A DNA stretch of 64,000 bases from Amphiscolops sp. MND2022 (Eukaryota). The notes under the pieces were generated by a model, which was not told the origin of the DNA, ran no database searches, and saw nothing but the letters and a program-made list of their open reading frames with translations. The stretch spans positions 45,260,001 to 45,324,000 of the forward strand of contig OZ076418.1 of assembly GCA_964187785.1 (NCBI GenBank), given 5' to 3'. Shown here piece after piece: positions 6,866-57,036 of the stretch (position 1 is its first letter; each line of letters opens with the position of its first letter). The position numbers and the translations under genes are program-made.

Positions 6866-6894
6866 TTTCTCCCCCTATTCTTTTCACATCTTCT

Positions 6895-7004
6895 TCAATT
6901 TCGGTTTGAGGGGCCTGGGGTTGTGGATTCTTCTGGGAGGAAATCCGCTGGCTTTTGTACTGTCTCGGGTTTCGGTATTCCTTTGTGTCTGGTCCACACG
7001 GTAC
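6895..7004 (-). CDS. Putative small 3' exon/sORF of element 1, (G)TVWTRHKGIPKPETVQKPADFLPEESTTPGPSNRN*
   Basis: Follows tttaatttatattacAG just after the pol stop; 23/35 aa identical to 50582-50691, with 6 synonymous codon changes and the stop at the same position. Confidence 0.65.
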
Positions 7005-7031
7005 CTGTAATATAAATTAAACATTTATTTT

Positions 7032-12216: not shown

Positions 12217-12271
12217 TCCGTTTTCTATGTTAAGAAATTTGTTACAGTTTAAAAATTGGCTGACTGCGCCA

Positions 12272-12493
12272 TGTTGTATTCTCTAGATCTAGATTAAGAT
12301 TGAAAAGAATAAAAGTTATATCTCTAGTTTCGACTGCTCTATATCAAATCAAATTGTACATATGTATCAAATGTAATTTAATGTAGATTGAGTTTGTTAG
12401 TAAACAACTCTAGTATCTAGACTAGATAGTTTGTAGACCGAATCTCGGTAGAGGTTAAATGGTAGTTTGAACCGGTTTGAACCGAATATAACA
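12272..12493 (-). repeat. 5' LTR of element 1 (222 bp)
   Basis: Direct repeat of 6634-6865, adjacent to the PBS. Confidence 0.97.
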
Positions 12494-26304: not shown

Positions 26305-26486
26305 TGAAGAGAGAATAGTCTAGACAACAGTAATTAGGTACCTGCCAATGAACTTACATTGCCCTCTAGACTATATTCATTTTGATGCAAACTTTACGTT
26401 GAATACAGCTACACTTTGTATGTTACATTACTTACTCTTTCTTAACTTGAGCATCCTACTTCAAACCTTTTATCGAGTCTACAACA
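26305..26486 (+). repeat. 5' LTR of element 2
   Basis: No differences seen versus the 3' LTR. Confidence 0.97.
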
Positions 26487-26525
26487 TGGCGCAGTCATAG
26501 AAGTACGAACAAGAGAAGAAAACCG

Positions 26526-27497
26526 ATGGAAAATACGAGCAACAACAACGAAACCGACCCAACGGCGGTCAACCAAACAACAGTCGAAAGGACTGAAAGA
26601 AACAAGTACAAGATCCCGATCTTATCGGATAGAGAAACTGACCTATCAAAAGCCAATCCCAAAATGTGGTGGGAACAAATATCCGAATACATAGATTTGA
26701 CATACCAAAAGAAACTGGACGAGCTGATGGAACAAGGGACGGACTCCATGGACCCTCATACAACCTATCACATCAAAGGTGATGTTATATGGGCACTGGG
26801 CCCAAAAGCAAAGCACGAAATTATGAGAGGTCAATGGGGAAAGGAACTTAAAGATATTAGTCTCCAAGAGTTGTTGAAACTATTCAAAAATACCTTCCTA
26901 CCAACCAGGAATGTATTCCACAGCCGGGCCCAATTCTTTAATATCAAGCAAGAAGATGGCGAAACCCTAGACGAGTACTGGAAGAGGCTGGTAGACATTG
27001 AAAGAAAGTGCGAATTTAACACCATCACACCCGAAGACATCATTTCATACAAATTTGCAGCAACCATAAACGATAAAAAAGCCCGAGATAAATTCATCAA
27101 AGGCCCACTGAAATTATCACTGATATTGGAGACCATTGAGCTGGACAACTATAACCGTAAATATGGAGACAAACAAACAACCTCCAAGAGACAGCGGAAA
27201 AACCCATCCGAAAGCACATCAGACGAGGAACAGGTCGGATACACAAAACCCGCAACGAAGAAGAAGGCCACGTTCACGGCTAAAAAGAAAAACACGGAGC
27301 GGAATTGCCACTTCTGCGGAAAATCCAACTGGACACCCGACCACACTTGCCCAGCACGGAAGGCGAAATGTAACAACTGTAAAAAGTCCGGTCATTTTGC
27401 AAAGGTCTGCCGATCAAGAACCGTAAACCGGATACAAGAGGAAGATACCGGTAGGATATCAATAGGATATCAACACGGAATCATGGCCAGAAATTGA
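26526..27497 (+). CDS. gag: gag of element 2
   Basis: Knuckles CHFCGKSNWTPDHTC and CNNCKKSGHFAKVC; frame break with duplicated taggatatcaa near 27452-27473. Confidence 0.92.
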   Translation: MENTSNNNETDPTAVNQTTVERTERNKYKIPILSDRETDLSKANPKMWWEQISEYIDLTYQKKLDELMEQGTDSMDPHTTYHIKGDVIWALGPKAKHEIMRGQWGKELKDISLQELLKLFKNTFLPTRNVFHSRAQFFNIKQEDGETLDEYWKRLVDIERKCEFNTITPEDIISYKFAATINDKKARDKFIKGPLKLSLILETIELDNYNRKYGDKQTTSKRQRKNPSESTSDEEQVGYTKPATKKKATFTAKKKNTERNCHFCGKSNWTPDHTCPARKAKCNNCKKSGHFAKVCRSRTVNRIQEEDTGRISIGYQHGIMARN

Positions 27498-27552
27498 CCA
27501 CATTCAGTCCGTCAACGGCATAAATCGAGTAGACTTCTACAAAGCCATCCTA

Positions 27553-30018
27553 TTGGTGGACGGACAACCAATTGAATTCATAATTGACACCGGCTCTCCA
27601 GTAACGATTATCCCACCAATTATCACTCCAAAACAAATCAAAGCGACTTCAAAGTGTTTCGTGGACGTAAACAAAAACCCGATAGAATTCAAAGGCGAAG
27701 CAATAGTTGAGGTCAAAACAGAGAAAACAAAAGTGATGTTGCCAATCCTAATAACCAAGAAAAAGAATACACAACCCCTGCTGGGATTGGATTGGCTAGA
27801 TAAATTGGAAATCGGTTTGCAAGGAAGCCACGAAACAAACATCATCAGGAGCATAACCACAAACGAAAAAGGTGAGAAAATTTTTAAAGAATTCGAGAAC
27901 CTTTTTAAAAACAATCACACCATAAAAAACTTAACCATAGACATTCAATTGAAAAAAGACGCAAAACCGATACAACAAAAGGGGAGACCAGTACCAATAC
28001 ACCTTCAAAAAATCGTGAAAAAAGAATTAGAAAAACTAATCGAAAAAGGACATTTGGAAAAAGCTGATAAAACAACTGAAAACTGCTTTGTCTCACCAGC
28101 CGTTATAACAATCAAAAAAGACAAATCAGTAAAAATTGCACTAGACTCCCGGAAACTAAACGAATCTTGCATAAAAAGAAAAGCAACAATGCCAAATATG
28201 GAGGAACTAATCAGTCAAATTTCCGCAAAAATTACACAAAATAACGGCGAAATTGGCGAAATTTGGATGTCCAAGATTGATTTAGATTATGCATACGGAC
28301 AGGCCAAACTATCCGCAGAAGCATCAAGACATTGCGTGTTCTCCATCATTGGCGGCGATTTCACGGGACACTACCGGTTCAAGAAGGGATTCTACGGCCT
28401 ATCTGACATACCAACGGTATTTCAAGAACATATAGATAAGGTCCTAGAATTTAAAACGCCGGTATGGTTAGATGACATCATTTGCGTCACAAACGGAACG
28501 ATAGAAGAACACGATCGGGAACTACGCGAAGTTCTAATAAAATTGCAAGAAGCCGGTTACCGAGCGAGTGAAAGAAAAACAGAACTGTTCAAAAAAGAGC
28601 TGACCTGGTTAGGGTACTTGATAAACCAAGAAGGGGTAAAGCCAATTAAAGATAAAACCGAGGCTATAACAAAATTAAAAGCCCCCACAAACACAAAAGA
28701 GCTAAAATCATTTCTGGGCTCAATACAACATTTATCAAAATTTTTGAACAACTTGTCTAAAAAGACCGACAGAATGAGAAAACTACTCAAGAAAGACGTA
28801 AAATGGGAATGGACGAAAGAAATAAACGATGATTTTGAACAACTAAAAAAGGAAATAACCGAAACACCATGTCTAGCACACTTCGACCCAAAGAAAGATA
28901 ATTTCATAACCACCGACGCCTGTAATACCGGATTAGGGGCAACCCTATGGCAGAAAGAAAACGAAACATTCAGACCGGTGGCGTTTGCCAGCCGATTTCT
29001 CACCGAATGTGAACGAAAATATGCCATAAATGAACTAGAATTGCTAGGCGTCTTGTGGGGCCTCGAATATTTCAGATATTACGTTTACGGAAAAAAAGTA
29101 AACCTCTTGACCGACCACCAGGCACTACAACCACTGCTAAAACGAAACAGGGCACACAAACAATACAGCGCAAGATTAACACGGTGGTTAGACCGATTGA
29201 GCCATTTCGATGTCAACGTGCAATACACCGCTGGTAAAAACATTCCGTTAACAGATTACTTAAGCCGTCATCCGATCATACACGAACACGAAACGGAAAC
29301 GCCACACGAAGGCGATGAAAGCGAAGCCGAAGAGGAATTCGTAATCAATCAGATATACGGCCTATTCGAGTTCAATCGTACGAACGGCAGTATTACGCAA
29401 CACATGCGACGACCACCACCGGTAAAGAATTCCGACCAATCAGAACGCAGAACGCAAGTACGCAAACAAAACGACCGCGAACATTCAATCCAAACTTTCT
29501 CACCGCAAAAAGATATTGACTCACCAAACAATTCAAACTTTGATTCGCAAGCACCGAAAATGTCAAAGATGGATAAAGTAAACGGAATCGATTTACAGTT
29601 TATATTCAAAAAACGGGGACACTCCCCAGAAACTAGTCGTCTACGGACCGAACGATTTAAACTTCTTCAACCAAATCGAACCAGAATTGTGGGAAAAGGC
29701 AAGGACAACGAGCGGATATTGGAATATCGTCCTTCGCAACAAGATCGAAAAGAAATTGAGAAATTAAACATCTTGATTTACAATAGATTCTTTTACCATT
29801 GCGAGAAACTCGGGACCACCCCACTCAGGGAATTTAACGAAAACCTACACGAATCTTGGATAAACACCTCGTCAGACAATGAAAGCCAGATTAGCCACGT
29901 AAAAACCGAAAAGTGCTCAACAAACATCCTCAAAAAGTTCAAAAAACATGAGAGCATCAATCTTATCAGATTGAAACAAACAGCGAAGCGAAATGTCCTG
30001 CCAGAAGAACGAAACTAG
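27553..30018 (+). CDS. pol: pol of element 2: PR-RT-RNase H-linker, ending at a premature TAG
   Basis: FIIDTGS, WLDDII, TTDAC, ELELLGVLWG, TDYLSR; the frame resumes after TAG 30016-18. Confidence 0.93.
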   Translation: MVDGQPIEFIIDTGSPVTIIPPIITPKQIKATSKCFVDVNKNPIEFKGEAIVEVKTEKTKVMLPILITKKKNTQPLLGLDWLDKLEIGLQGSHETNIIRSITTNEKGEKIFKEFENLFKNNHTIKNLTIDIQLKKDAKPIQQKGRPVPIHLQKIVKKELEKLIEKGHLEKADKTTENCFVSPAVITIKKDKSVKIALDSRKLNESCIKRKATMPNMEELISQISAKITQNNGEIGEIWMSKIDLDYAYGQAKLSAEASRHCVFSIIGGDFTGHYRFKKGFYGLSDIPTVFQEHIDKVLEFKTPVWLDDIICVTNGTIEEHDRELREVLIKLQEAGYRASERKTELFKKELTWLGYLINQEGVKPIKDKTEAITKLKAPTNTKELKSFLGSIQHLSKFLNNLSKKTDRMRKLLKKDVKWEWTKEINDDFEQLKKEITETPCLAHFDPKKDNFITTDACNTGLGATLWQKENETFRPVAFASRFLTECERKYAINELELLGVLWGLEYFRYYVYGKKVNLLTDHQALQPLLKRNRAHKQYSARLTRWLDRLSHFDVNVQYTAGKNIPLTDYLSRHPIIHEHETETPHEGDESEAEEEFVINQIYGLFEFNRTNGSITQHMRRPPPVKNSDQSERRTQVRKQNDREHSIQTFSPQKDIDSPNNSNFDSQAPKMSKMDKVNGIDLQFIFKKRGHSPETSRLRTERFKLLQPNRTRIVGKGKDNERILEYRPSQQDRKEIEKLNILIYNRFFYHCEKLGTTPLREFNENLHESWINTSSDNESQISHVKTEKCSTNILKKFKKHESINLIRLKQTAKRNVLPEERN

Positions 30019-31844
30019 AAAACAGCCGAAACGATCAGAAGAGCCGAAAGAGACTTTTCCATGGATTTACCTCTACTAGTTGAGGAAACTGCGCAGGACG
30101 CTAAAATACTTGACGCAATCATCGCGCTAGAAGCTGGAAAAGGAGACGGTATCTTCTACCCATACCGACCACACCGTGAACATCTGGAGACCAGATTTGG
30201 ACTACTATTCTACAATGATAGAATCGTCATCCCAGAAGCAATGCGGTCAACCATAATTGCCATGCTACACAGCGGCCATGTCTCGATTAACAAAATGGAC
30301 AAATCAGCAGAAGCATTTTGGTGGCCGGGACTACACCGGGACATTAGAGAAAAGGCGGAAAACTGCCCCAGTTGCCGAGTAGCAGGTAAGAATCTAAAAA
30401 CACAATTACCGCAAACGGAAATAAATAGGCTCGAACTTTTAACCGAACCCGGCCAAGAAATTCAATTGGACTTCGCTGGTCCAATCAAATCAAAATCGCG
30501 GGGAGACATTTACATTTTAGTAGCCATCGACCGTTTTAGCAAATGGCCAACCGCACAAATTTGCAAAAATACGGACTCTCGGACCGTAATAAGTTTTTAA
30601 CAAAATACTGCACCGACAACGGAACACCGAAAACGATACGCACCGACAACGGTAGCTGTTTTAAAAGCAACGAGTTTAAAGATTACTGCAACGGTGAAAA
30701 CATTAAACGAATTAGATGTACCCCGAATTTACATACGGGAAACGGATTGGTCGAGAGAACAATACGCACAATTAAGTCATTAACAAGAGCCAATTTAGAA
30801 GACGGCCTAACTTTTGAAGAAAGCGTCGCAAGGGCAATTAAAACAATTAGACAAACACCACATAACACACTGAAAATGACTCCCTTTCAATTACACCACG
30901 GACGAAAACCGCGCACACCGATCACCAATCTGATTGGACAACCCACCTGCCTATTAGCGGACTGGAAGAAAACATTAACTAATTATTTTTTAGCACAACC
31001 GGCGGAGCTACAAGTTTTTACAGTCCACGATTCCGACGGGGAACTCGCAGATTATTTGGTCCTCAATGAATCAAGGAAGAGGGGTAGATCGGTAAGAGAC
31101 AATTTTGAAAGTTACCAATTTTTTGAAAAGGAAACCAAGCCCAATGCAATGAAATGCAGGTTCAAAACCAATAAAATTTTAACCGCAGCTAATGAGACTA
31201 AACATACGATAACCACAACCGATGGAAAGGTTATCCACAAAAAACTAGCATCTAACCCCTTTAAATTTCAGCCAGCAAAGAAAACAGAAGAGCCGAGGAA
31301 ACCCACCAACAGATGCACCAGATGCGGCCGATTCAGTCACGATGATCTATGTGACACTCACAAAAGAATCCGTTCCGAACAACAGGGACAATCAACGAGC
31401 GCAGATAAAACAATCCCCACAATGCCAATTGAAAGGTCTGAAGCACGACCGGATATCACGGTAATATCCGACAGCCAGTCATCACACGCGGATGAATTAC
31501 CGAGCACGGCAAACATTGATCCGGAACTAACCATCACGGCCGAAATCAAATACGACGATGCCGTGAAACCAACAGAAGAGACTCGAGATAACGAAACTCC
31601 CGCCATATCTCCACCAGTGGACTGCAGCACGGAGAAAACAAAGCGTATTGCTAAGGACTTCGACAACACCCCTACTGGATCGCCACAAAAAATACACATG
31701 TCCCCAAATAGAGGTGTAGTAGAACTTAATTTAGACGGGGGGGGAAATATAGAAAACAAGGTGGTAGAAAAAGGGATCCGCAGATCAGATAGAATAAAAT
31801 CTGCAAAAAGAGTAGTAAAAATGGGAGGAATAGAATATTTCTAA
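30019..31844 (+). pseudogene. pol: Integrase and C-terminal extension of element 2, 1-bp frameshift ~30590
   Basis: HSGH...CPSC, LDFAGP, RTDNGSCF, GLVER; the split ORFs 30061-30600 and 30543-31844 join with a 1-nt correction. Confidence 0.92.
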
Positions 31845-31990
31845 CAAAATCTGAATTTAGATCCAAAGTCAAAGAACATCGGAAAAGCCAACGTCTCCCG
31901 CCGCAGCCCAAAGAACACAACAAAGACGGGAACTAACAAGAAACCCGGCGAGAACTGAGATCGCTCTCACCAATCCCGAGGAGGGGGGAA

Positions 31991-32172
31991 TGAAGAGAGA
32001 ATAGTCTAGACAACAGTAATTAGGTACCTGCCAATGAACTTACATTGCCCTCTAGACTATATTCATTTTGATGCAAACTTTACGTTGAATACAGCTACAC
32101 TTTGTATGTTACATTACTTACTCTTTCTTAACTTGAGCATCCTACTTCAAACCTTTTATCGAGTCTACAACA
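31991..32172 (+). repeat. 3' LTR of element 2
   Basis: Preceded by the PPT and followed by the TSD. Confidence 0.97.
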
Positions 32173-36489: not shown

Positions 36490-39315
36490 CTAGAAAAAAA
36501 TTGAATAGAGGTGTTTGTTATCAACAATGTACAAATCAGTGAGATTTTTTGTATATTTACGCAATTGAACCTTACTGAAAGACTCAATATTTTCCGGGAG
36601 TAAGTTCATCCACTTCAACCAATTGAATGCTTTTCGCAGAGTGTTCCCAAGTGATTTCCTTTTTACTACAGTTCTGCAATAGGTTGAAGAAAAGAGTCCT
36701 TTTTGACTCCAGCGGGTTGTAGGTTTATTCTTTTCTGCTACTTTCTCAGGGAAAAACTTTTGTGGTGTCTCATTACGTAGTTGCTTAAACAACTCCTTGA
36801 CAAGCTCTTCCATGTAAAGTTCAAAAACTGTTAGGACTTTATTTTCCAATAACAAGTTTGAAATGGATTCAGATCGCTTTTTGAAAAAATAACTCGGATA
36901 ATTCTTCGCTGTGCGTTTTCAATTTTTTTTTCAAATTTGTTTTTGCTGCTGAGCCATACACTAAGATACCGTAGGAAATTATTGACCTGGCAAACGAATT
37001 ATAGAACATGAGAAGACATTTTCTCGGATACAAGTCTCTGACACGGTAAATTAACCACAAAATTTATTGAGTTTCTTCACAACGTAATTGATGTGTTCCC
37101 TGAATTTGAGACTTCCATCTAGATGTAGACCTAAGTATTTACATGAAGATTTGTAACATAGTTCTTCATTTAAAATAATTCTTTTTTCTGGCAATCCGCT
37201 GCCAAATGATATTGCTTCGCATTTATCTATATTAACTGTAAGTTTACTAGCTGTGAACCAATCAGTGATTCTATGTAGATCTTCGTTGAGTTTCCGGTCA
37301 GTATGTTTTCCAGATTTCACAATAGTTGTATCATCTGCAAACATCACTATTTGGCTGTCCTTCACAACTTTTTGTAGATCATTGATGTAAAGGAGGAAAA
37401 GGAAGAGGCCTAGTACACTGCCCTGGGGAACGCCAGTTTTAACACAGAGTTTTTTGGAATGATTTCCATTTTCACAAACAAATTGGTACCGGTCACTGAG
37501 ATACTCTCGGAGTATTTCTAAAACTGTTCCTCTGAAGCCATATTTCTCCAATTTGAACCTTAGAATTTCATGGTCAAGTGTATCAAACGCTTTCTGTAAG
37601 TCAATAAAGCAAGCTTGTCCTTTGTTTTTTGCCTCAATTTCATTTCTCATGAATTCTGTCACAGAGTTAATAGCGTCAATGCATGATCTTTTCTCTCTGA
37701 AACCATATTGAATATGTGTTAATATATTCTCTTTTTTGCAGAATTTGACCATACGTTTGTGCAAAAGTTTCTCGAAAATTTTTCCTAATGAACTCAAAAG
37801 ACTAATTGGTCGGTAATTGGATGGATCTGTTTTATCGCCTTTTTTGTGTAGAGGAATAACTTTTGCAGTTTTGAAACACTTCGGATATGTTTTTTCTTGG
37901 ATGCATTTATTAAAAGCAATTGCAATAAAATTTTCAACAATGGGAGAATAGCATTTGATTATTTCGTTGGTGATGCCATCTTCACCATAACTTTTTTTGC
38001 ACTTCATTTCGCGTATTATCTTAGTTACCTCTGAAGCATTTGTTTGATGAACAACCATTGTTTTTTCTAACCTGTCAATATCCGTTTTAATTTGGATTTC
38101 AGGTAATTTAGATGATAACTTCGAGCCAATATTTGCAAAATATTCATTTATCACATCAAGGTCAGGAAGATTTGAAACTTGTTGTTGCCGTTTCTTTATG
38201 CCTAATGTTTTGTAAATGGTTTTGGAATCCGGATTTTTACCTAGTTTTTTGAAATTATCAATTCTTTTAGCTTCGCGTATCATATGCGTGACTTTATTAC
38301 GATAGGATTTGTATTTCTTTCTATAGTCATCACACGGATTGTCAATCCACTTCTGATACAATTGGTTACGTTTAAGCAATGCATTTTTTATCGAATTTGT
38401 TATCCACTGATTATCACTATTATGCAGAATCGGTTGTTTCGGAGCCAACTTATCGATGCATTCCATTATTGCTTCAGACATTTGAACAATGAGGTCATCA
38501 ACGGGGGAGTCCAACGATATTCTCTTAAGCTTTTGATCGAGGAGAAAAAGAAATTTCAAAGCTCCATCCCCTTTAATTGTTTTCAGATTTCTCACGAATT
38601 GTTGTTCCCTGGTTTTTTCACGCCTTCCAGTCTTCGGAAATTTTGCTAGCACGCTGTAGTGGTCACTAATTGTTGTTTTGACTGTTTCTGTCAGAATGTC
38701 ATTCTGTGATATCATATGATCAATACAAGTTCTAGACTTAGGTGTGACTCGCGTTGGTTCAAAGTTTCTGAGCTGGAAATCATAAGCATTTAACAATGAT
38801 ACATAGTTTTCATGATCACAGTCGGTTTTTAGGGTATCAATATTGAAATCCCCAAAAATTATCGATTCATGAATGAAAGAGTTGATGAAATGCAAAACGT
38901 GTTCAAATTTCGGGAAAAATTGGGTCAATCTCATTGTCTCTGGTCTATAGACAACGCAAACTAGCTTCACATCGTCATCATTGAATTTTATTTCCAAAAT
39001 TTTGCATTCTATGTCTGTGTCAAACGCAATAGGGCTGAACTCGATACCGTTTTTCACATAAATAGCAACTCCGCCCGACCTCCGTTTGACGTTATGTCTA
39101 TGCTTTGATTCTATTGGCTGATAACCATCAATATTGTAATCATAGAGGTCATACTCTTCCGAAACCCATGTTTCAGCAAAAGCTAAAACTTGTGGTAGAC
39201 TCGGTAAACTTTTCAAAAAGATTTGTAGTTCATCTTTATGGTACCTTAAGCACTGGATATTTAGTCCTAAGATTAGATTGTTTGATAGCGTCATTGTTTG
39301 GTTCTCGTTAAACAA
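36490..39315 (-). pseudogene. LINE ORF2 (APE endonuclease plus RT); 754 aa intact, then two frameshifts (~37052, ~36925)
   Basis: LNIQCL, FAETW, GDFNID, CIDH (APE); NYRPISLL, QYGFR, DLQKAFD, GVPQGSVLG, FADD (RT). Confidence 0.93.
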
Positions 39316-39434
39316 AAAAATAATTGGGTTGTTTAGTGTATTTCAAGTTTCGACCAATGTAGTTGCAGTCAAACTTGTTTTATATAATTGTAGTTTACTT
39401 TTTGTTGCAACAGCACATTGAATAGTTTTTACAC

Positions 39435-40250
39435 TTAAGTAAGTTTGACCGCAAGGTTTGATTCATCTTCCAATTGTTCGGTGTCCATTCTAATCTGTTT
39501 CAACAGGGCAAGACTTTGAGCTTCATTGGGAGACTCTCTAATTCGCTTAAGAACTGATTTGAGGGCGTCATCGTTCTTGACTATTGGTGTGCTCGGTGTG
39601 TGAGGCTTTCTTTTTTTGGATGCACGCTTTACAGCAACGTTCTTTATGTCCTCTATAGCGCGAATACTTTTTACTGCTTTACTAGTAAACTTGCCATCAG
39701 TATTAGTGAACACTTTCACTTCACAATTTTGAGTGGTTGTTATCAAATCGTATTCTTCTGCTTTTTCTTTTATGAGTCTTTGATGAAGTGGAAGGCGCTC
39801 TCTCAAATAAATACTTCTTCCATTGAACGGATTAGGTTTGCCAGCGAGCCAAGATTTCCGGCCAAAGATTTCAGCTTTTTCACCAAAATACACAAATTTG
39901 ACGATGATTGGTGGCTGCTTTTTGCCTTTCTCGTATTTTCCCAGAAAATGACAGGCTTTGAAATTGGAAGGATTGGACTGATAATTCAAGTATTGTTTCA
40001 AAAAAGCACATACCTGTTCCTCCAGTGTAACCTTACCATGACCCAAAGGCATGTTGTCGATAATTAAACAATCTTTTGATGAATATTTCTCCATTTCCAA
40101 GACTCGTTCTTCCAGATTTTGCACTTGATTCTTCAGGGTGATCACCTCTTCATTCTTTTGCTCAAGTAAATTAACGAAAAGTTCCAGTAGTCCTCGACTT
40201 TGAGTTGATTCCACGTTTGTAATTTCATTTCGTAAAGTTTCAAGAGCCAT
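39435..40250 (-). CDS. LINE ORF1 (coiled coil plus L1-type RRM), intact 271 aa
   Basis: KDCLIIDNMP, ACHFLG, PPIIVKFV, IYLRERL. Confidence 0.85.
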   Translation of the reverse strand: MALETLRNEITNVESTQSRGLLELFVNLLEQKNEEVITLKNQVQNLEERVLEMEKYSSKDCLIIDNMPLGHGKVTLEEQVCAFLKQYLNYQSNPSNFKACHFLGKYEKGKKQPPIIVKFVYFGEKAEIFGRKSWLAGKPNPFNGRSIYLRERLPLHQRLIKEKAEEYDLITTTQNCEVKVFTNTDGKFTSKAVKSIRAIEDIKNVAVKRASKKRKPHTPSTPIVKNDDALKSVLKRIRESPNEAQSLALLKQIRMDTEQLEDESNLAVKLT

Positions 40251-44866: not shown

Positions 44867-46137
44867 TTAGCTGTACGGGGCTGAAATCCATCCTCACCTC
44901 CTCGTGGTAGTCCCTGGGGAGGCAGTTCAGGCTCGGAAGCACCAGAGAGTTCATTCTCTCGGAGCATCCGTAGTCGTATTGAACTGCTGAGCTAACGAGG
45001 CCATGGTATGCAAGAAAGCAATGGCAAACTACTTGCATTATTCTGCCAAGAAAATCCATGAAAGTCACCAAAAAGACTCGGAAAAACAGCGTGAATGGAA
45101 ATAGAAGACATGAATCCTCTATGGCCTTGCTCGGTCAGACTTCTGTTTCATCCGAGGACAACTCTGACCGTCATCAAGCTACTCGGATCGAATTGGAGTC
45201 CGACAAGGCTGTGTAGCATCCCCAATCCTGTATAATACCTTCAGTGAAAAAATAACGAGGTCAATAGAAGAAATGAAAGGTGTCAGCATTGGCGGGATGA
45301 ACACTGACAATCTTCGATTTGCAGACGACACAGCAGTGATCGCGGATTCAGAGGACAAACTGCAGTTGTTAATGACAACCTTGAAGGATGCATGTGAAAA
45401 GCATGGAATGGAAATTAACACCAAGAAAAACAAAACCGAAATAATGGTAATCTCCAAAGAACCGAAAAAGTGCTCAAAACATTTGAATGAAGAAAAGAAT
45501 AATCAAACAGAAACCTTCACTTATCTTGGGACGCTCATAACAGAAGATGGAAAATGTACAAAAGAAATAAAATGTAGAATTGCCCAGTCAAAAAGTGCAT
45601 TCACCAATTTGAAAAAGATCCTGACAAACAAAAAACTTCCCTTCAAAACCAGATTTAGAGTTTTACGTTGCTACGTTTGGCCGGTACTTTTGTATGCGTG
45701 TGAAACCTGGACACTCAATCTTGAGTCGAAGAAACTCCTTGAAAGTGTTGAAAAGTGGTATCTCAGGAAAATGGAGCGCATATCATACACAGCACACAAA
45801 ACCAATGAATTTGTTTTAAGTAAAACCCAGAGAAGTTGGATGATACTTAGAGATATTGAAACGAGACAATTTAAATTCTTTGGACATGTGATCAGAAAAT
45901 GCGATTTGGAAGAAACAATTTTTTCCGGATACATCAACGGCAACAGATCCAGAGGAAGAAGTAGAAAGACATATCTTGATGATATCTCGGAAAAATTAAC
46001 AAGAAGTCGGGCCGAGTGCATAAGAATCGCAAAGAAGAGAGAAGAATGGAGACTTTTATGGAAAGCCTATGTCTGTGACCAGACACGGCACTAAAAGAAG
46101 AAGAAGAAGAAGAAGAAGAAGAAGAAGAAGAAGAAGA
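44867..46137 (+). mobile_element. RTE-clade LINE with intact ends and a large internal deletion
   Basis: 10-bp TSD ACTAATAGTT (44857-66, 46138-47); 5' UTR and MALLGQ..SDRHQATRI joined directly to RIGVRQGC; (AAG)14 tail. Confidence 0.9.
45273..46094 (+). CDS. RTE RT C-terminal portion (273 aa open frame)
   Basis: NLRFADDT, GMEINTKK, FTYLG, EIKCRI, LLYACETW, FFGHV, GNRSRGR. Confidence 0.88.
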   Translation: MKGVSIGGMNTDNLRFADDTAVIADSEDKLQLLMTTLKDACEKHGMEINTKKNKTEIMVISKEPKKCSKHLNEEKNNQTETFTYLGTLITEDGKCTKEIKCRIAQSKSAFTNLKKILTNKKLPFKTRFRVLRCYVWPVLLYACETWTLNLESKKLLESVEKWYLRKMERISYTAHKTNEFVLSKTQRSWMILRDIETRQFKFFGHVIRKCDLEETIFSGYINGNRSRGRSRKTYLDDISEKLTRSRAECIRIAKKREEWRLLWKAYVCDQTRH

Positions 46138-50479: not shown

Positions 50480-51038
50480 TAGACAGTTTGTAGGTTTGTA
50501 GACCGAATCTCGGTTGAGGTCATGGAAGTCGGAGTGAACCGAATATGACATTTCCCCCTATTCTTTTCTCGTGTAGTTTCTCTAGATTCCGCTCGGGGGG
50601 CCTGGTGATGTAATACCCTCCGGGAGGAAATCCGCTGGTTTTTGAATCACCTCCGGTTTGGGCGTTCCTTTGTGTCGGTTCCACATGGTACCTGTATTAT
50701 AGATAATGTTCATTAAACATTTTAATTTCACCCCCAGAATTTTCCCGTGTAGGGTATACTGCCGTATCTATTCGGACTTTTACTATCACGGTTGGATCGT
50801 CTTATTTGTGTTTTTAAATTCTCACCCGGTACCTCGCTGTCGGTGTGTAGCTGCAGCGTGTCTTCTTCCGGATTTGTCCGTATTGGCACATATCTCCCGT
50901 CTCTTTCGGATATGTCGTATACTGTTGGCGTTCCGGTTTCTTCCGGCAGTTCTTCATCGTCATCATCATCATCATCATCGGTGTCACTTTCTGCCCATTT
51001 TTTGTTTAGGACGATTTTTAGTTTACCGGTCAGGATGT
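50480..51038 (-). mobile_element. 3' fragment of a diverged relative of element 1 (pol tail, 3' region, PPT, partial LTR)
   Basis: Pol tail PNRYGSIPYTGKFWG* (stop 50728-30); PPT at 50551-62; LTR edge at 50550. Confidence 0.9.
50582..50691 (-). CDS. Putative small 3' exon/sORF, (G)TMWNRHKGTPKPEVIQKPADFLPEGITSPGPPSGI*
   Basis: Follows ataatacAG; same 110-nt length and frame as 6895-7004. Confidence 0.65.
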
Positions 51039-52133
51039 AGAGGTTTACGTCAACGCTACGTCATTTCTCCAACCAATCAAACAGAAATGTATAAATTAAT
51101 AATAGTTGTATGGCTATTAAAGCCCAAAAAAAGTACATTCGGCCTGCTGAGAAAGGAATTTCTAACCAATGAAATAATAACCATGAAACCATATTTTCTT
51201 CAATCGTAAGTTCATTTCTAGATAAAAGGCCGCAGCTCAACATTTTTTGTACTCCGTATAAACAGTTCTTACATACATATTTTGTTCTGACATGCATATA
51301 TTTGAACGATTTCAATTTCGATTCATTCAGTTTCTGTTTTTCGTGTTAAGGACTATCAATCTCGAAGTTTGAATTTCAGTATTCGGAAATCTTTTTTAAA
51401 ATGACTACCAGAAAACACAAGACAGAAACAGCTGTTTTGGAAACAAGAAATTGTTAGTTCTTCGATTTGTGATTTTCTCCAAATCCAAATTGTAGAAATA
51501 GGAGAATGCGGGACCCTCCAGTGAGATCATTCATGCCCCTAGGAGATCTGAATTTGAAAAACTGAAATAGTCTTTAACAGAATAAGTTTCTGCCGAGATC
51601 GAAACTTTGTTCACTCAGTCTCAGACGGCGTTAATCCAGGTTTTAAAATCAGGAAATAAGAAAAAGTTTGGGGATGTGACAGAAACCCCTAACTGTGACG
51701 CTCCGAGGGAGCAATCTACTCCAAGTAGGGTCATACGTTTTGAAGACGTTTGAAAACTACGGACCTTGCGAAGTTCGTAACACTTATATATTTTGTGTAT
51801 CTTAAAACTGAAACCAGAATACCCTTGAAAATTCTTAGGAACCATTTGATTTCAAGCGGAAACGTTAAAAAGGTGTGAAGTAGGTATTTTGAAACTTCTG
51901 CTCCCAGTGGTTTTGAATTAATTCTCCACAAAAATTACCGAAAGAAAAGAAGGTTATATAGCTTGGAAAGAGCAAACAAAAATTTTCATTTGGGGCACAC
52001 TTTCTCTTAAAAGGATTATTCCTGTTCTCCAGATTGGTCGCCTCATTCCACAGCCTTCTTTTAAATGACGTACTTAAAAAATACACCTATTCTTGCAATT
52101 CCACAAGATTTGTAGCAATTTTCGTCATTTCAG

Positions 52134-52250
52134 ATCCTTGTGTGACGGGACAACATCCTTGTCATCACAACGCAGAGTGCACTTTCGATGGGAGTTCTTG
52201 TTTGTGTGCTTGTAGATATCTGCAAGGGGGCGATGGCTTGTATTGCACAG
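52134..52250 (+). CDS. Secreted lectin-like gene, exon 2 (EGF-like domain)
   Basis: tttcAG, PCVTGQHPCHHNAEC..CLCAC..GDGLYCT, CAG|GT; 117 nt, phase 1-1. Confidence 0.85.
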
Positions 52251-52564
52251 GTACTATTTTTCCAACCAGGGTAAATTGAGGGGAAAACCAGGCTGGGATG
52301 TTCTTTTTCATCTCCAGTTTTGGCCGAATTTCCTTCCTAAACGCGAAATCATAGTTGTTGCATTTGTCGTGTGCGACTTATGGCGAATAAAAAGAAAGAA
52401 ACTTACTACGATAACTCAAAAAAAAATAAACTCAAAACTTGTAACATGTAGTTTTATCTTTTGTAACTTGCGCAGTTTTATCTTTGTTATTTTCTCACTC
52501 AGCTCTGAATTATGAACACGCTCGAACGTGTTCACTCCCTTTGTCCAGCGACGCTGGACACATC

Positions 52565-52780
52565 CCATATTTGGTCATGACGTCAAATGACATCATTTTC
52601 TCGTGGATGCTTCGCCCACGAAATACACATACAAAATGATCTCGTTTGTCAGATCAAATGACTTGACGTCATATGACGTCATGCTCGTCAGCCAATCACA
52701 GTAGTGATTCAATTTTATTGGTTGACGAAGCGGTCAAATTTAGTATAAAAGCAGACCAAATTTTCACCTCTCAGAGTTCT
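52565..52780 (+). promoter_or_regulatory. Pol II promoter-like cluster
   Basis: CArG CCATATTTGG 52565-74; TGACGTCA at 52578, 52664 and 52674; CCAAT 52692; ATTGG 52717; TATAAAA 52744-50; Inr-like TCAGAGT ~28 nt downstream. Confidence 0.65.
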
Positions 52781-53050
52781 TCCTTTGGCAAAATACTAAA
52801 TTGATAAATCACTCATCTTCAACTCTACAATCTCCGTTCACGGGTTCAATCCCCATCTTCAGCGCGGCGCAAAATTTGTTAGTTAAACCTTTTCAATTTT
52901 CTTTTTGGAGCTTTCATTTTTCTAAGATATTTTCTTAACTTTAACTTTAATTCATTTAGTCTTTGTGCTTTTTGTCTAAGTTTTCAATCTTCTTCTTAAC
53001 TTAAACTTTTATCAATAGTTCTTAAAGTTTTACAAGTTTTGACTCAGTCT

Positions 53051-53450
53051 TGTCTGAGACGATTTTCGACACTGCTTCAAGTAAAACAAGTCTATCTTAA
53101 ACTTTCGTCAAGCCTGCTTTCTAGTTAAAGCAAATTTGTCTTAGACGATTTTCAACGCTGCTTCAAGTGAAGCAAATTTAGCTTAAACTTTTTTCAAGCC
53201 TGCTTTCTAGTTGAAGCAAATTTGTCTTAGACTATTTCCAACCTGCTTTAAGTAAAGCATTTTTATCTTAAAATATTTCCGAGCCAAAACAAGTTAAATC
53301 TTAAGCTTTTAAACTCTGCTTTAATATTGAAGCAATTTAAATCTTTAACTATTTTCGAATCTGCCTTCAAGTAAAGGCAAGCTAAGTTTTAGTCTTATAT
53401 TATTTTCAATCTAAAACAACACAAAAATCTGCTTTCATCGTTAAAGCAAA
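53051..53450 (+). repeat. Tandem repeat (86-bp dimer of ~43-bp units), each unit with a TGCTTT/AAAGCA-type hairpin
   Basis: 86-bp periods start at 53051, 53137 and 53223; hairpins at 53073, 53115, 53159, 53201, 53244, 53317, 53362 and 53430. Confidence 0.85.
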
Positions 53451-55419
53451 TCTTCTCTTACGTTGGAGTTTTAATTGACTTTTGACTTCGAACAGAAGCT
53501 ATAATACCGTCTTTGTTTAACAAAGATTGAATAGTCTCTGCTTTATAATAGACTCTAAACCAAAGTCTGGTAGATATACTGACTCTAAACCAAGAACCAC
53601 AGCTTCAGCTGGGTTATAGGAGACTTAAATAACTTAGTTTTTGTTTGACTCTTCAAGTCAAACTGTTCTCAATTGGAGACAAAGAGTAGCCGTATAGCAC
53701 TCTATAAAACCAGTACAACAATCTGTTGTTCTTTAATCAAGAGAAGCAAGTAGCTCTCTTTTCAGTCCGTGACAATCAGTGGACTATAAACACATTGCAA
53801 GCTATCGCTGCATCTTATAAAGAGGCTTCACCTCTTGATCTGGTAAAAAAATAAAAACAACTTAATAACTAATTCTTTTTCTAACAACTTATCTCTTATT
53901 ATTCAAAGATAGATTTCAAGTTTGATTTAATTATATTCCTTTGTTTATGCTTATTTGTGCACTTTACTTTTGTATGAGTGACATTTATTACAACTTTAAT
54001 ATAAACAAAGAAAGGTTCAATTTACATATTCTTAGACGAAAATACACTTTTCTCCCGGGTCATAGAAATAAAGTCCTTCCATCCGAACTCACACCTGAGA
54101 CAACCTTTGCTGAAGTGTAGGAAGGCACAGTCGCGAAAATTTTAAGTACGAGACTACTTTTAGATTTGGAATTAGAAATTAGACGAGAAGTGAACTAAGA
54201 GTTCACAAATTAGACTATAATTGAGACTTATAATTATTCTTGATCGAACTCACATAATTTTTTCAGAAAGTAAATCGAAAGTGAATTGAGAATTATATTT
54301 CTTTTCTTGATTAAACTCGTACACAAAAATCACCAGCGCAAAGCGCATGCATCAAAAATCTAAATAAGAAAAACTATTTTCAACCGAACACTTCACACAT
54401 TGAAATTGCTTCCAAGGTGAAAATTTTTCCAACAGTTTTTGCCAATAGCTACTAGAAGTTTTTGGAAAGCTAGAAAGTACTTTCCAATTGGCGTAGAGGT
54501 TAATTTGCGTTTCTCAACCTGTTGATGCATTCTGGGAAGCAGTAGAACGTGGGTCTCATTCCCACCCAAGACCAATGTTTTTTCGGCACTGTGTAGCATA
54601 CCTGGACAACAAATTGAAGCCAGAATGAACAGAATTACCCATCCTAAAAAGCGGGTTTTTTCTGGAAGGAAGTCGCAAACATAAGAGAAAGTTTTAATAC
54701 TTCAATCCAATTTTCGTAAGATATTTTTTCCAAATATCCTTAGAGACTCATATCCAAATGAACTCCAAGGTATTTTTAAAATTCTTTCTGTTTTATGAAA
54801 TGACCTCCAACATTTAACGTAGCGTTTTTGATTGAATTGTTTTTGACAGGTTACAGAAAACAATGAACTGTGTCTCGTCAGCATTTTTATTGAGACGGTG
54901 GGTTGCGAAAGTATCAGAAGGTTCTTTTATGCCTTTCTGCAGGTAATCAACGCCAGTTTCAATGTCAAACAATTAAGGTTGGAATGTGTTTTTTTCAAAC
55001 GGTCAGTTAGCGAAAAATTTGAAAACATTCACAGTGTCACTGCGCCTCTTGTTGATATTCGTGAGACAGTTGCGACATTAGGTTTCTATTACGAAATCGC
55101 CTTAAAATTCCTTTTTCGTGAAATTTTACGATTTGTTTTTCAGGTCATCGCAAAATTAACCCGTCGGCTTTTGACAACATCGCAGCTGCAAATATCTCTG
55201 AAGAAGGTTAGTTTGATAGGTTTTTTGTGATCTACACTTTTTAGTAATCAAACATTCATTGGTCTCATCAACTGACTCCCCAAATTTTTCAGGCATATGA
55301 TAACTTTTTGAAGGACAGACAAACTTTTATCATGAAATGATTATGTACGAATACTGACACTAATGTTGACAACCCATTTAGTTCCATGCATGATTCTGAT
55401 AAATAAAAGCATTGTTCAT

Positions 55420-55779
55420 CAGAGTTTTGACATCGCTAATCAGCGATTTAGCGAATTAGCGGCCGCGCAGGAATTTTTCAGCGATTTCATTAGCGATTCA
55501 AATTTGCGGTAACTAACTGACCCTCCAAATTCAAAGTTTCTTCTGTGTATAGACGGTGTTTCAAAATGAATTTCGGAAAAATTCCAACCCTTACCCTTGT
55601 AAAACACGCACAGTATAAAAAATTCTAGTCTTTTTTCTTCCAAAAACCGAATAAGTTAATTTGAAACATAGTTGAAGCTAAACATTTAATAGTTTGCAGA
55701 AAAAGCTTTTCAGCAAAATAGCGATTTTCAAATTAGCGGTTTAGCGATTAGCGGAAGAAATTAGCGATGTCAAACCCTG
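55420..55779. mobile_element. MITE with CAG.. TIRs and a 5-bp TSD
   Basis: cagagttttgacatcgctaat / attagcgatgtcaaaccctg; TTCAT on both sides (55415-19, 55780-84); subterminal tagcga repeats. Confidence 0.75.
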
Positions 55780-55995
55780 TTCATATACATGGCACTGCTG
55801 TTTTCGTTATGGAATTATATGGTCAATGCATGGATTTCAAAATATACAAAAACCTCACAGCAAATTCTCCCGGAAAAAATAGCAAGCCTATCAGAGATAC
55901 ATGAAAACAAGCTTTCCTGTCACTAGGTTTCAACCGTAGCAACGTCGGGGGAGATTCAAAACTCAGAGTTTCAGTCGGAATTCTGTTAAAATCTA

Positions 55996-56227
55996 CCCAG
56001 CGATCGAAGACACGCTACGCTTGCCAAGATCATGGTAATCTTGGTAAATCATAGTTAACCATGGTACCCTTGTCAAGATCATGGTAGAACATGGTACGCT
56101 CGGCTCGATCTTGCAAAATCATGGTATCCTTGGCAAGATCTTGGTAAGATCATGGTGAGATCTTTGCAAGGCCAGCTTGCGACTTACCATGGTTCTTGGC
56201 AAGCGTACCAAGTCTTCGATCGCTGGG
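55996..56227. mobile_element. MITE with CCCAG termini and TA TSD (possibly CMC/EnSpm-derived)
   Basis: Perfect 16-bp TIR cccagcgatcgaagac, extending imperfectly to ~48 bp; TA flanks; internal catggt/cttgcaag repeats. Confidence 0.85.
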
Positions 56228-56835
56228 TAACCACTTCCAAATGGTTACACATCTCTCCGTCGATTCCTGTTGATTACACAAGCAGAATTGTGCGAAGCGT
56301 TACCAAAATCATAGGAGTTGGATGTGAAATCTTCACAACACGTTCGATTCATAACAATAGATGGTAAAATTGCTGTCCGAAAGAGTCAATTGCTTTCGTA
56401 GAAGAATCTTGGATTAATTTTTTCCAAATAAAGCGAAATAAATGGCAGAGCGACTGTGTCTCTTGCTTGCAACTTTTTCAATAGCAAAATCCCGCCGCAA
56501 TCTACCGACAAAAGTCAGCTACCTAATCCGGTTATTTGATCGATTGGTGGATTCCCAAATAGCATAAAAACTAAATTAGTTTCATATAACATAAAAATAA
56601 AATTGTTTACGAGAAAGTTTTAGTGGTCAAAAGCATTCACAATTCCCTGAAAAATTATAAAAATTACAGATGAAATTTTGTGAGTTCGATTGTTAAACTG
56701 GGTTTTTGGTTTCATTTTTATGTTATGTGAAACTAATTTCATTTTTATGGTAAATGGGACTAATTTGGTTTTAATGTTATTTGCTCTTGTTATTTGGTAC
56801 GTAATCGATCGATTGAATGAGATATAATGTTTTAG

Positions 56836-57036
56836 CGGAATCTTTGCTGAACATTTTGGTAGATGGAGGTGCTGATCATGGCATTGAAACCGAAGTAAAT
56901 CAAACAAATGGAAACAAGAACGGCGTTCCAATTGAGGCCTTTGGGAATGCCACGTTTTGGCACATCAACATAACAATGAAGCACAGACATTTCATAGAAG
57001 CTGTCGGTATATTCAACCAACACTCAGATTCATCAA
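56836..57036 (+). CDS. Secreted lectin-like gene, exon 3 (first half of an F5/8C-fucolectin-like domain)
   Basis: ttttAG, (A)ESLLNILVDG...ATFWHINIT..FIEAVGIFNQ, CAA|GTAAT; 201 nt, phase 1-1. Confidence 0.8.

What the first reader, a model, noticed from the sequence alone, without database searches (positions are those of the whole stretch)
53051..53450. Array of ~43-nt repeats each holding a co-varying stem-loop: candidate structured non-coding RNA
Seen: TGCTTT-ctagtt-AAAGCA (53115), TGCTTC-aagt-GAAGCA (53159), TGCTTT-ctagtt-GAAGCA (53201), TGCTTT-aagt-AAAGCA (53244), TGCTTT-aatatt-GAAGCA (53317), TGCCTT-caagta-AAGGCA (53362), TGCTTT-catcgtt-AAAGCA (53430), plus one imperfect copy (53073). 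Loops and linkers diverge in sequence and length (4-7 nt) while stems persist, with two different compensatory changes. The T-G pairs work as G.U only on the plus strand, the strand the upstream TATA promoter would transcribe. Inference: selection on RNA hairpins forming a multivalent protein-binding, packaging or localisation scaffold. Alternative: DNA palindrome repeats acting as origin or enhancer.
Basis: partly seen in the sequence, partly recalled or inferred. Interest (0 to 1): 0.75.

Follow-up and report, generated by a model that had tools for sequence, protein, structure and literature searches.

The report
Hairpin repeats inside a solo retrotransposon LTR
The repeated small hairpins are real, but they are not a stand-alone RNA gene: they sit in the transcribed leader of a 2-kb long terminal repeat left behind by a high-copy, virus-like retrotransposon, and whether the hairpins act as RNA is only weakly supported.

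Summary
Window 53050-53448 holds a 43/86-nt tandem array with eight 6-bp inverted repeats (TGCTTY-N4-7-RAAGCA) at the stated coordinates, far above chance.

The array is not an independent locus. It lies in a 2,033-bp solo LTR (52365-54397, TGT...ACA ends, 4-bp target duplication CATT). In other loci of the same assembly this LTR flanks a Ty3/gypsy-type element with gag, pol, a Monjiviricetes-type fusion glycoprotein and a MATH/TRAF ORF. The "TATA promoter" is the LTR's U3 promoter. The array lies between it and the primer-binding site, so it belongs to the R/U5 leader of the element's genomic RNA.

- Arms are much better conserved than flanks between old paralogous units (0.87 vs 0.62).
- Arms are slightly better conserved than linkers between copies (pi 0.073 vs 0.130).
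- Spacer length varies from 4 to 7 nt, which argues for a fold rather than a duplex protein site.
- Covariation is not significant (2 double changes vs 0.6 expected, 39/500 shuffles; RNAalifold covariation term positive).
- The G.U strand argument fails across copies (19 T.G vs 12 C.A cells).
- No RNA data were available.

A 1,266-nt ATG-free run on the plus strand is conserved in the less diverged copies. The scan did not note this family before.

The parts
52361..52364 (+). Left copy of the 4-bp target-site duplication CATT
   Evidence: Sequence read. The same CATT follows the LTR at 54398-54401.
52365..54397 (+). Solo LTR (2,033 bp) of a high-copy Ty3/gypsy-type, env-carrying retroelement; starts TGTCG and ends CTTCACA
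   Evidence: Full-length blastn matches of 83-95% identity to LTR copies in L086-L093, with homology starting and ending at these bases. Single-copy contigs stop at 52392 and resume at 54429; summed depth in between is 100-1000 times higher. No second copy and no internal region in the window.
52365..52775 (+). U3 with pol II promoter: TGACGTCA at 52578-85, 52664-71 and 52674-81; CCAAT at 52692-96; inverted CCAAT at 52717-21; TATAAAAG at 52744-51. The end of U3 (transcription start) is inferred about 25-30 nt after the TATA box.
   Evidence: Sequence. TATAAAAG sits at the same LTR position (376-396) in 7 of 8 full copies. The transcription start was not measured.
52684..53946 (+). ATG-free run on the plus strand (gap of 1,266 nt between ATGs at 52681 and 53947)
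   Evidence: Longest ATG gap in the window (next is 510). Dinucleotide shuffles expect 8.9 ATGs and 0 of 2000 shuffles reach zero; the same stretch has 8 CAT. Runs of 1,354 and 1,348 nt occur in L087 and L089; more diverged copies are interrupted.
53050..53448 (+). Tandem array of 43/44-nt units. A and B units form an 86-nt higher-order repeat, followed by older units U5, U7, U8 and U10 and two degenerate units without a hairpin (about 53285 and 53411).
   Evidence: The number of hairpins per LTR copy varies from 5 to 10.
53073..53088 (+). Hairpin 1, TGCTTC-AAGT-AAAACA, imperfect in this copy
   Evidence: Other genomic copies read G at 53086, which restores the C-G pair (table 3).
53115..53132 (+). 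Hairpin 2, TGCTTT-CTAGTT-AAAGCA
   Evidence: RNA MFE -4.5 kcal/mol.
53159..53174 (+). Hairpin 3, TGCTTC-AAGT-GAAGCA (inner pair C-G)
   Evidence: RNA MFE -7.3 kcal/mol.
53201..53218 (+). Hairpin 4, TGCTTT-CTAGTT-GAAGCA (inner T.G)
   Evidence: RNA MFE -4.9 kcal/mol.
53244..53259 (+). Hairpin 5 (U5), TGCTTT-AAGT-AAAGCA
   Evidence: Other copies have a 5-nt loop, CAAGT.
53317..53334 (+). Hairpin 6 (U7), TGCTTT-AATATT-GAAGCA (inner T.G in all copies)
53362..53379 (+). Hairpin 7 (U8), TGCCTT-CAAGTA-AAGGCA (pair 4 is C-G instead of T-A)
53430..53448 (+). Hairpin 8 (U10), TGCTTT-CATCGTT-AAAGCA; stems unchanged in 8 of the 9 copies aligned (L093 reads AAAACA)
53449..53850 (+). Non-repetitive part of the leader, holding further short inverted repeats (53510, 53644, 53715, 53820)
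   Evidence: The 53449-53950 alignment that contains this part has 93% mean column identity in 10 copies. Perfect 6-bp inverted repeats are listed. RNAalifold gives no covariation support (term +2.05).
53947..54120 (+). First ATG of the presumed transcript opens a 57-codon ORF inside the LTR; probably not a real protein, used here only as a handle to fetch other copies
   Evidence: Protein identity of 72-89% is about what neutral DNA divergence would give. The copies were found through this ORF, so its retention is ascertainment-biased.
54067..54072 (+). AATAAA, candidate polyadenylation signal about 330 nt before the LTR end
   Evidence: An AATAAA/ATTAAA motif 328-340 nt from the LTR end in 8 of 10 copies. 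A second candidate, ATTAAA at 54310-54315, is also conserved. The AATAAA at about 53850 is private to this copy.
54398..54401 (+). Right copy of the target-site duplication CATT

Best explanation
Window 52365-54397 is a solo LTR, the remnant left when the two LTRs of an inserted retrotransposon recombine. It belongs to a high-copy Ty3/gypsy-type, envelope-carrying retroelement. The 43-nt hairpin array lies downstream of it and upstream of the primer-binding site seen in full copies. It is therefore part of the R/U5 leader of the element's plus-strand genomic RNA, and if R is as long as the conserved poly(A) signals suggest, it is also present at the RNA's 3' end. These points are shown. What follows is inferred. 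In active copies the conserved 6-bp arms most likely fold as a row of small RNA hairpins (-4 to -7 kcal/mol each), separated by U-rich linkers, in an AUG-free leader. They would serve as repeated cis-acting sites for an element or host protein, in Gag/nucleocapsid binding for packaging, RNA export, or R-region strand transfer. Unit number would change by template switching within R. I put about 0.4 on this RNA-level function. The copy in this window is a dead relic with no internal genes and at most a stray promoter.
For: Identity as an LTR:
- Summed contig depth is 100-1000 times higher exactly over 52393-54428.
- Full-length homology starts at TGTCG and ends at CTTCACA in eight other loci.
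- A 4-bp CATT duplication flanks the window copy.
- Copies in L087, L088 and L093 are followed 3 nt later by the conserved TGGTGCGACCAGTGAGG, then by gag, protease, RT, RNase H and integrase.
- Copies in L086, L089 and L091 are preceded by an env-like ORF (Monjiviricetes_fusion, E 2e-39) and a MATH/TRAF ORF (E 5e-23).
- TATAAAAG is conserved.

Constraint on the arms:
- Identity between six old unit types is 0.87 for arms and 0.62 for gapped flanks.
- Within single arrays, arms are 0.81-0.91 identical and flanks 0.51-0.62.
- Between copies, stem pi is 0.073 and linker pi 0.130 (permutation p 0.025).
- 96% of stem cells are paired in orthologous hairpins.
- Spacers of 4, 5, 6 and 7 nt occur between unchanged arms.
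- Double-sided changes occur at pair 6 (A units), pair 4 (U8, and U7 in L092) and pair 3 (L088 unit 1). A read-derived variant TGCTCT..AGAGCA affects pair 5.

Plus-strand use: the 1,266-nt ATG-free run occurs on the plus strand only and is kept in the younger copies.
Against: - Covariation is not significant: 2 double-sided pairs against 0.6 in shuffles (39/500), and paired cells 96.3% against 95.7% (65/500). The RNAalifold covariation term is +0.32.
- T.G cells (19) and C.A cells (12) are similar in number, so there is no strand signal from wobble pairs.
- The minus strand folds with a better z-score.
- Two units in every array have lost the hairpin, and the number of units varies from 5 to 10, so no fixed architecture is required.
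- There is no Rfam match.
- No RNA evidence is available.
- All copies come from one assembly, were found through one ORF, and are only 5-17% diverged, so power is low.
Confidence: 0.6

Rival explanations
1. The arms act on double-stranded DNA. The array would be a cluster of transcription-factor, enhancer or insulator sites placed just downstream of the LTR promoter, comparable to the Su(Hw) site array in the Drosophila gypsy 5' UTR or the 40-bp repeats of ERV9 LTRs.
For: Arm sequence, not only pairing, is strongly conserved: pair 2 is invariant and pairs 1, 3 and 5 nearly so in 68 hairpins. A conserved unpaired C precedes every 5' arm. A-type linkers hold a second DNA palindrome, GTCTTAGAC. 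U3 of the same LTR is also rich in palindromic sites. There is no strand asymmetry of wobble pairs. Repeat arrays with regulatory roles are common in retroelement LTRs and leaders (my own knowledge, not tested here).
Against: The spacing between the two half-sites varies from 4 to 7 nt with unchanged arms, which a dimeric duplex-binding protein would not normally tolerate. Several double-sided complementary changes keep pairing rather than sequence. No gypsy-type TGCATA motif is visible in the array (sequence).
Confidence: 0.2
2. The array is a neutral minisatellite. One ancestral unit happened to contain a palindrome and was multiplied by slippage or template switching in the LTR, so the hairpins have no function.
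For: Copy number is unstable: 0-3 A/B pairs and 5-10 hairpins per copy. A contig joins 52977 to 53250. Two units have decayed in all copies. Covariation is within the range of shuffles. Tandem repeats are frequent in LTRs (my own knowledge).
Against: The old unit types U5, U7, U8 and U10 have diverged to about 60% in their flanks and have wholly different loops, yet keep 11-12 of 12 arm bases. Homogenisation of whole units cannot explain this. Stems are less diverse than linkers between copies.
Confidence: 0.17
3. It is an independent structured non-coding RNA gene with its own promoter.
For: A TATA/CCAAT/CRE promoter, an ATG-free plus strand, and hairpins.
Against: Promoter, array and downstream sequence are one 2,033-bp unit with LTR ends and a target-site duplication. 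The unit is present at very high copy and flanks gag-pol-env in other loci. There is no Rfam family.
Confidence: 0.03

Closest known systems
Solo LTRs of Ty3/gypsy (Metaviridae) envelope-carrying retroelements ('errantivirus-like'), as surveyed across metazoans in eLife RP108449 (PMC13524379)
   Same: TG...CA ends, a 4-bp target duplication, a U3 TATA promoter, and a TGG-starting primer-binding site after the 5' LTR. The internal region encodes gag, protease, RT, RNase H and integrase plus an env-like fusion glycoprotein.
   Different: The LTR is unusually long (2.0 kb), with a leader of more than 1.2 kb before the first ATG. The element carries an extra MATH/TRAF-domain ORF between env and the 3' LTR. 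In that paper, 'tandem repeat' and 'MATH' gave no hits.
R-region and leader hairpins of retroviruses (HIV-1/HIV-2 TAR and poly(A) hairpins; multi-stem-loop Psi packaging signals such as in MoMLV)
   Same: Small stem-loops in the transcribed R/U5 leader of an LTR element, several in a row, and a leader free of AUGs. This resemblance rests on my own knowledge and was not tested here.
   Different: Here the hairpins are 5-10 tandem copies of one 6-bp stem inside a 43-nt repeat, with loops that are not conserved. There is no sequence or Rfam similarity, and binding, packaging and transcription are untested.
Su(Hw)-binding site array in the 5' untranslated region of Drosophila gypsy; 40-bp tandem repeats of ERV9 LTRs
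   Same: A tandem array of short degenerate units with a conserved core, lying in or next to the LTR of a gypsy-type or ERV element, with a variable number of units (my own knowledge).
   Different: Those arrays act on duplex DNA through non-palindromic or fixed motifs. Here the core is an inverted repeat with variable spacing, lies inside the LTR downstream of the TATA box, and has a different motif.
Hairpin arrays in a Helitron-like transposon of the same genome (earlier scan note s1-175701)
   Same: Same genome; repeated stem-loops carried by a mobile element, with the DNA-versus-RNA question left open.
   Different: A different element class (rolling-circle), a different core sequence (CCACG-N5-CGTCGA) and a different position (after genes and at the 3' end). 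I did not re-examine that note.

Membership tests
LTR of an LTR retrotransposon (here as a solo LTR) | The same sequence occurs as direct repeats flanking a gag-pol internal region | tested here: met
   5' position in L087, L088 and L093; 3' position in L086, L089 and L091. No single fetched locus spans both LTRs of one element.
LTR of an LTR retrotransposon (here as a solo LTR) | TG...CA termini and a short (4-6 bp) target-site duplication | tested here: met
   TGTCG...CTTCACA, with CATT on both sides of the window copy.
LTR of an LTR retrotransposon (here as a solo LTR) | A primer-binding site starting TGG just after the 5' LTR, and a polypurine tract just before the 3' LTR | tested here: inconclusive
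   The conserved AAC-TGGTGCGACCAGTGAGG follows the LTR in L087 (twice), L088 and L093, but the matching tRNA was not identified (no tRNA gene in the window). The sequence before the 3' LTRs (GAAACCCGGGTGAGA) is only partly purine-rich.
LTR of an LTR retrotransposon (here as a solo LTR) | U3 promoter and a poly(A) signal inside the LTR | tested here: met
   TATAAAAG is conserved in 7 of 8 full copies. AATAAA about 330 nt and ATTAAA about 88 nt from the LTR end are conserved. Actual use was not measured.
Ty3/gypsy (Metaviridae), envelope-carrying | gag, aspartic protease, RT, RNase H and integrase in that order, plus an env-like ORF after pol | tested here: met
   Retrotrans_gag (E 1.3e-6), Asp_protease_2 and Monjiviricetes_fusion (E 2.2e-39). 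RVT_1, RT_RNaseH_2, Integrase_H2C2 and rve from precomputed hits. No RT phylogeny was made.
Any described RNA family (Rfam 15) | A covariance-model match at the gathering score | tested here: not met
   No hit in the whole window. Only two chance-level hits (E 0.1-0.2) in the LTR.
Conserved structured RNA (by comparative criteria) | Significant covariation of the proposed pairs across homologues | tested here: inconclusive
   Two double-sided pairs against 0.6 in shuffles (39/500), and none in the slid controls. RNAalifold covariation terms are +0.32 and +2.05. The copies are too similar (89-93% column identity) for a powerful test.
Conserved structured RNA (by comparative criteria) | Transcription of the strand that folds | not testable with these tools
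   The only runs that hold the stretch are contig sets not recorded as RNA.
Retroviral packaging signal / TAR-like element | Binding of Gag/NC or a trans-activator, and a requirement for packaging or expression | not testable with these tools
   Needs experiments.

The most novel reading that the evidence does not exclude
The array is a functional, multivalent RNA element in the unusually long, AUG-free R/leader region of an unannotated family. The family is an envelope-carrying Ty3/gypsy retroelement that also carries a MATH/TRAF-domain gene. The 5-10 hairpins would act together as repeated binding sites for packaging or export of the genomic RNA. That would be a modular, copy-number-variable counterpart of retroviral Psi or transport elements in an invertebrate endogenous virus.
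Probability: 0.3. Interest if true: 0.55.

Novelty: new member of a known kind. Interest (0 to 1): 0.3.

Why it matters
The main value is negative. A striking "structured RNA gene" candidate is explained as part of a solo LTR, so it should not be counted as a host non-coding RNA. The family itself has some interest. It has a 2-kb LTR with a leader of more than 1.2 kb without AUG. It holds a repeat whose inverted arms are kept across old paralogues despite variable spacing. Its internal region combines gag-pol with a negative-strand-RNA-virus-type fusion glycoprotein and a TRAF-like MATH gene. If the hairpins prove to be RNA binding modules, they would give an easily dissected example, because unit number varies naturally, of how invertebrate endogenous retrovirus-like elements mark their genomic RNA.

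Tried and rejected
- Rfam gave nothing at gathering score on the window, and nothing meaningful at a permissive E-value on the LTR.
- blastn against phage records found no match.
- Two exact-pattern scans of viral contigs and one of metagenome contigs, using the promoter or array sequence, gave 0 hits.
- A generic two-hairpin pattern in metagenome contigs gave 83 loci. None shows any blastn similarity to the element, so they are unrelated palindromic repeats and were dropped.
- Look-ups of two small ORFs of the element by exact protein found nothing. A word search with the 59-aa ORF then succeeded.
- A DNA transposon, MITE or Helitron was considered. There are no terminal inverted repeats and no TC...CTRR ends, and the idea was rejected once the LTR ends, duplication and PBS were seen.
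- A heat-shock-type promoter was considered. The GAA/TTC blocks at 52514-52534 are a 7-bp inverted repeat with the wrong spacing (sequence).
- The AATAAA at about 53850 was considered as the poly(A) signal, but it is private to this copy.
- The 57-codon ORF was considered as a real protein. Its protein identity is no higher than neutral DNA divergence predicts, and the copies were ascertained through it.
- The wobble-pair strand asymmetry is not present across copies.
- Two of four literature searches ran: one gave nothing useful on hairpin repeats in LTR leaders, the other found the two env-capture papers cited in the report. The other two failed on term format.

Full report
**1. The observation**

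- Tandem Repeats Finder reports a 44-nt period (4.7 copies, 73% matches) and an 86-nt period (2.6 copies, 86% matches) over 53050-53272.
- The repeat finder follows degenerate copies to about 53450.
- The inverted repeats TGCTTY-N4/6-RAAGCA occur five times exactly, only here in the 64-kb window, against 0.01 expected for each pattern.
- With the two variants TGCCTT/AAGGCA and the 7-nt loop, plus the imperfect first copy, there are eight hairpins at exactly the coordinates given.
- The array has a higher order. Units with a 4-nt loop ('A') and a 6-nt loop ('B') alternate as an 86-nt repeat. Four older units follow (U5, U7, U8, U10), with two degenerate units that have lost the inverted repeat.

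**2. What the locus is**

Laying contigs of four public runs of the same organism on 51001-57000 showed a sharp change in depth.
- Single-copy contigs (depth about 50-100) end at 52392 and resume at 54429.
- The stretch between them has summed depths of 7,000-100,000.
- So the promoter, the array and about 1 kb downstream form one high-copy interspersed repeat.

The window has no second copy, and public phage, viral and metagenome collections gave no relatives.

The window turned out to be part of contig ctg183553 of ENA assembly ERZ25074608. No gene is called inside the repeat there. A word search with a spurious 59-aa ORF of the repeat (53941-54117) then found nine near-identical 'proteins' from other copies in that assembly. 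Eight of these loci were fetched.

**3. Evidence that it is an LTR**
- blastn shows homology that begins at TGTCGTGTGCGAC (window 52365) and ends at CACTTCACA (window 54397) in all full copies.
- In L087, L088 and L093 the repeat is followed after 3 nt by the conserved TGGTGCGACCAGTGAGG, a primer-binding-site-like sequence. After that come gag (Retrotrans_gag, E 1.3e-6), aspartic protease, RVT_1, RNase H and integrase.
- In L086, L089 and L091 the repeat is preceded by three ORFs: a 695-aa ORF matching Monjiviricetes_fusion (E 2.2e-39), a 153-165-aa ORF without a family, and a MATH/TRAF-domain ORF (E 4.9e-23).
- The window copy is flanked by CATT on both sides (52361-52364 and 54398-54401) and has no internal region.

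The window copy is therefore a solo LTR of 2,033 bp from a Ty3/gypsy-type, envelope-carrying retroelement of roughly 17 kb. That size is my estimate from overlapping partial loci. Envelope-carrying Ty3/gypsy elements are known across metazoans (PMC13524379), and capture of chuvirus-type glycoproteins by retrotransposons has been described in mosquitoes (PMC7642597).

The LTR appears to lie in an intron of a plus-strand host gene. An EGF-like exon ends with a GT donor at about 52250 (EGF_3, E 2e-4, below Pfam's cut-off).

**4. Where the array sits in the LTR**
- The TATA box (TATAAAAG, 52744-52751), two CCAAT boxes and three TGACGTCA sites form the U3 promoter. The TATA box is at the same LTR position in 7 of 8 full copies.
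- The array starts about 300 nt downstream of the TATA box and about 950 nt upstream of the LTR end.
- The conserved poly(A)-signal candidates lie 330 and 88 nt before the LTR end. The AATAAA at about 53850 is private to this copy.
- By architecture the array is therefore in R, or at least in the R/U5 leader, of the plus-strand genomic RNA.

Consistent with use as a scanned leader, the plus strand has no ATG from 52681 to 53947.
- This gap is 1,266 nt; the next longest in the window is 510.
- Dinucleotide shuffles expect 8.9 ATGs, and 0 of 2000 reach zero.
- The same stretch holds eight CAT triplets.
- The run is 1,354 and 1,348 nt in the least diverged copies and is broken by one or two ATGs in older ones.
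- In L087 the remaining 820 nt before gag contain five ATGs. Either gag is translated despite them or the leader is spliced. A GGTAAAA at 53843 is conserved, but this is untested.

**5. Are the hairpins under selection, and as what?**

Evidence for constraint:
- Between the six unit types of one well-preserved copy, the 12 arm bases are 87% identical while the flanks are 62% identical, even with gapped alignment. Loops are unrelated.
- Within whole arrays the figures are 0.81-0.91 for arms against 0.51-0.62 for flanks.
- Whole-unit homogenisation cannot produce this pattern.
- Between nine copies, stem columns are less diverse than linker columns (pi 0.073 vs 0.130, permutation p 0.025). The fraction of variable columns (25% vs 37%) does not differ significantly.
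- Spacer length ranges over 4, 5, 6 and 7 nt with unchanged arms. This fits a fold better than a dimeric duplex-binding site.
- Each hairpin has an RNA folding energy of about -4 to -7 kcal/mol.

Covariation:
- Double-sided, pair-keeping changes exist at pair 6 (A units, C-G), pair 4 (U8; U7 of L092, with the half-changed form in L088) and pair 3 (unit 1 of L088). A read-derived variant, TGCTCT..AGAGCA, affects pair 5.
- On the orthologous alignment A1 this amounts to 2 pairs with double changes against 0.6 in shuffles (39/500), and 96.3% paired cells against 95.7% (65/500). The slid controls show none.
- RNAalifold finds the four hairpins but assigns a covariation term of +0.32.
- By my own count on the six unit types, the chance of seeing no mismatch given the column contents is about 1/12.
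- Together this is suggestive, not significant.

Strand:
- Over 68 hairpins there are 19 T.G and 12 C.A cells, and nine of the T.G cells are one inherited event in U7.
- 53 hairpins are fully paired as plus RNA and 46 as minus RNA.
- The minus strand of the array folds with a better z-score.
The LTR architecture does.

The non-repetitive leader after the array (53449-53950) is the best conserved part examined (93% column identity) and holds more short inverted repeats. Again there is no covariation support.

**6. Interpretation**

Shown: the locus is a solo LTR, and the array lies in its transcribed leader.

Inferred, at about 0.4: in active copies the arms fold in the genomic RNA as repeated binding or chaperoning sites. 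Possible roles are Gag/nucleocapsid binding, RNA export and R-region strand transfer. Unit number would drift through template switching in R.

Rivals:
- A duplex-DNA regulatory array (about 0.2). It is favoured by strong sequence conservation of the arms and the conserved flanking C, and disfavoured by the variable spacing.
- A neutral minisatellite (about 0.17). It is favoured by unstable unit number and decayed units, and disfavoured by arm-specific conservation.
- A free-standing non-coding RNA gene, which is effectively excluded.

**7. Limits**
- All copies come from one assembly, were reached through one ORF, and differ by only 5-17%.
- No RNA data were available: the single run search found only contig sets not recorded as RNA.
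- The transcription start, poly(A) site, splice sites and the tRNA matching the PBS are not established.
- The host species was not identified. The contig naming and the metagenome-labelled assembly suggest a host-plus-symbiont HiFi assembly, but that is a guess.

Noticed in passing
L086:1324-2301, L089:1812-2102, L091:7655-8602 (just upstream of the 3' LTR): The retroelement carries a MATH/TRAF-domain ORF (TRAF-mep_MATH E 4.9e-23 in L086) after its env-like gene. It looks like a captured host signalling-adaptor domain, in the position where retroviruses keep accessory genes.
   Followed up: partly
L091:5078-7165; also L086:1-727 and L092:12689-13726 (minus strand): The env-like ORF matches Pfam Monjiviricetes_fusion (E 2.2e-39), a fusion glycoprotein type of negative-strand RNA viruses. 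L092 holds a second element, in the opposite orientation, with the same kind of gene.
   Followed up: partly
window 52681-53947: A 1,266-nt stretch without ATG on the plus strand only, conserved in the younger LTR copies. It ends at a 57-codon ORF inside the LTR that is probably not a real protein.
   Followed up: yes
window 52034-52250: An EGF-like exon (EGF_3, E 2e-4, below the cut-off) ending in a GT donor on the plus strand. The solo LTR seems to lie in the following intron, in the same orientation as the host gene.
   Followed up: partly
window 55420-55774, 56000-56200, 56588-56806: Three further short stretches with summed contig depths of 100,000 or more and many internal-deletion joints. 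They look like very high-copy small repeats (MITE-like), some built of AATTAGCG-type units.
   Followed up: no
window 6634-12493 (minus), 26305-32172 (plus), 37051-40250 (minus), 45273-46094: The window is dense in other transposons: two gypsy-type LTR elements with near-identical LTR segments, a LINE with an endonuclease-RT ORF, and an RT fragment.
   Followed up: partly
L092:484-4370 (minus strand): Polinton-like genes (a DJR-like capsid domain and a Pox_A32 packaging ATPase) lie a few kb upstream of a truncated copy of the LTR, with other ORFs between.
   Followed up: no
window 24526-29497 = L084; window 35273-56094 = L085: The window is identical to part of contig ctg183553_116x_l (232,842 bp) of ENA assembly ERZ25074608, a record held among metagenome assemblies. 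This is how other copies of the element could be fetched.
   Followed up: yes
L001-L083: The generic pattern of two TGCTTY..RAAGCA hairpins 20-32 nt apart hits 83 metagenome contigs, mostly as larger palindromes. None is similar to the element.
   Followed up: partly
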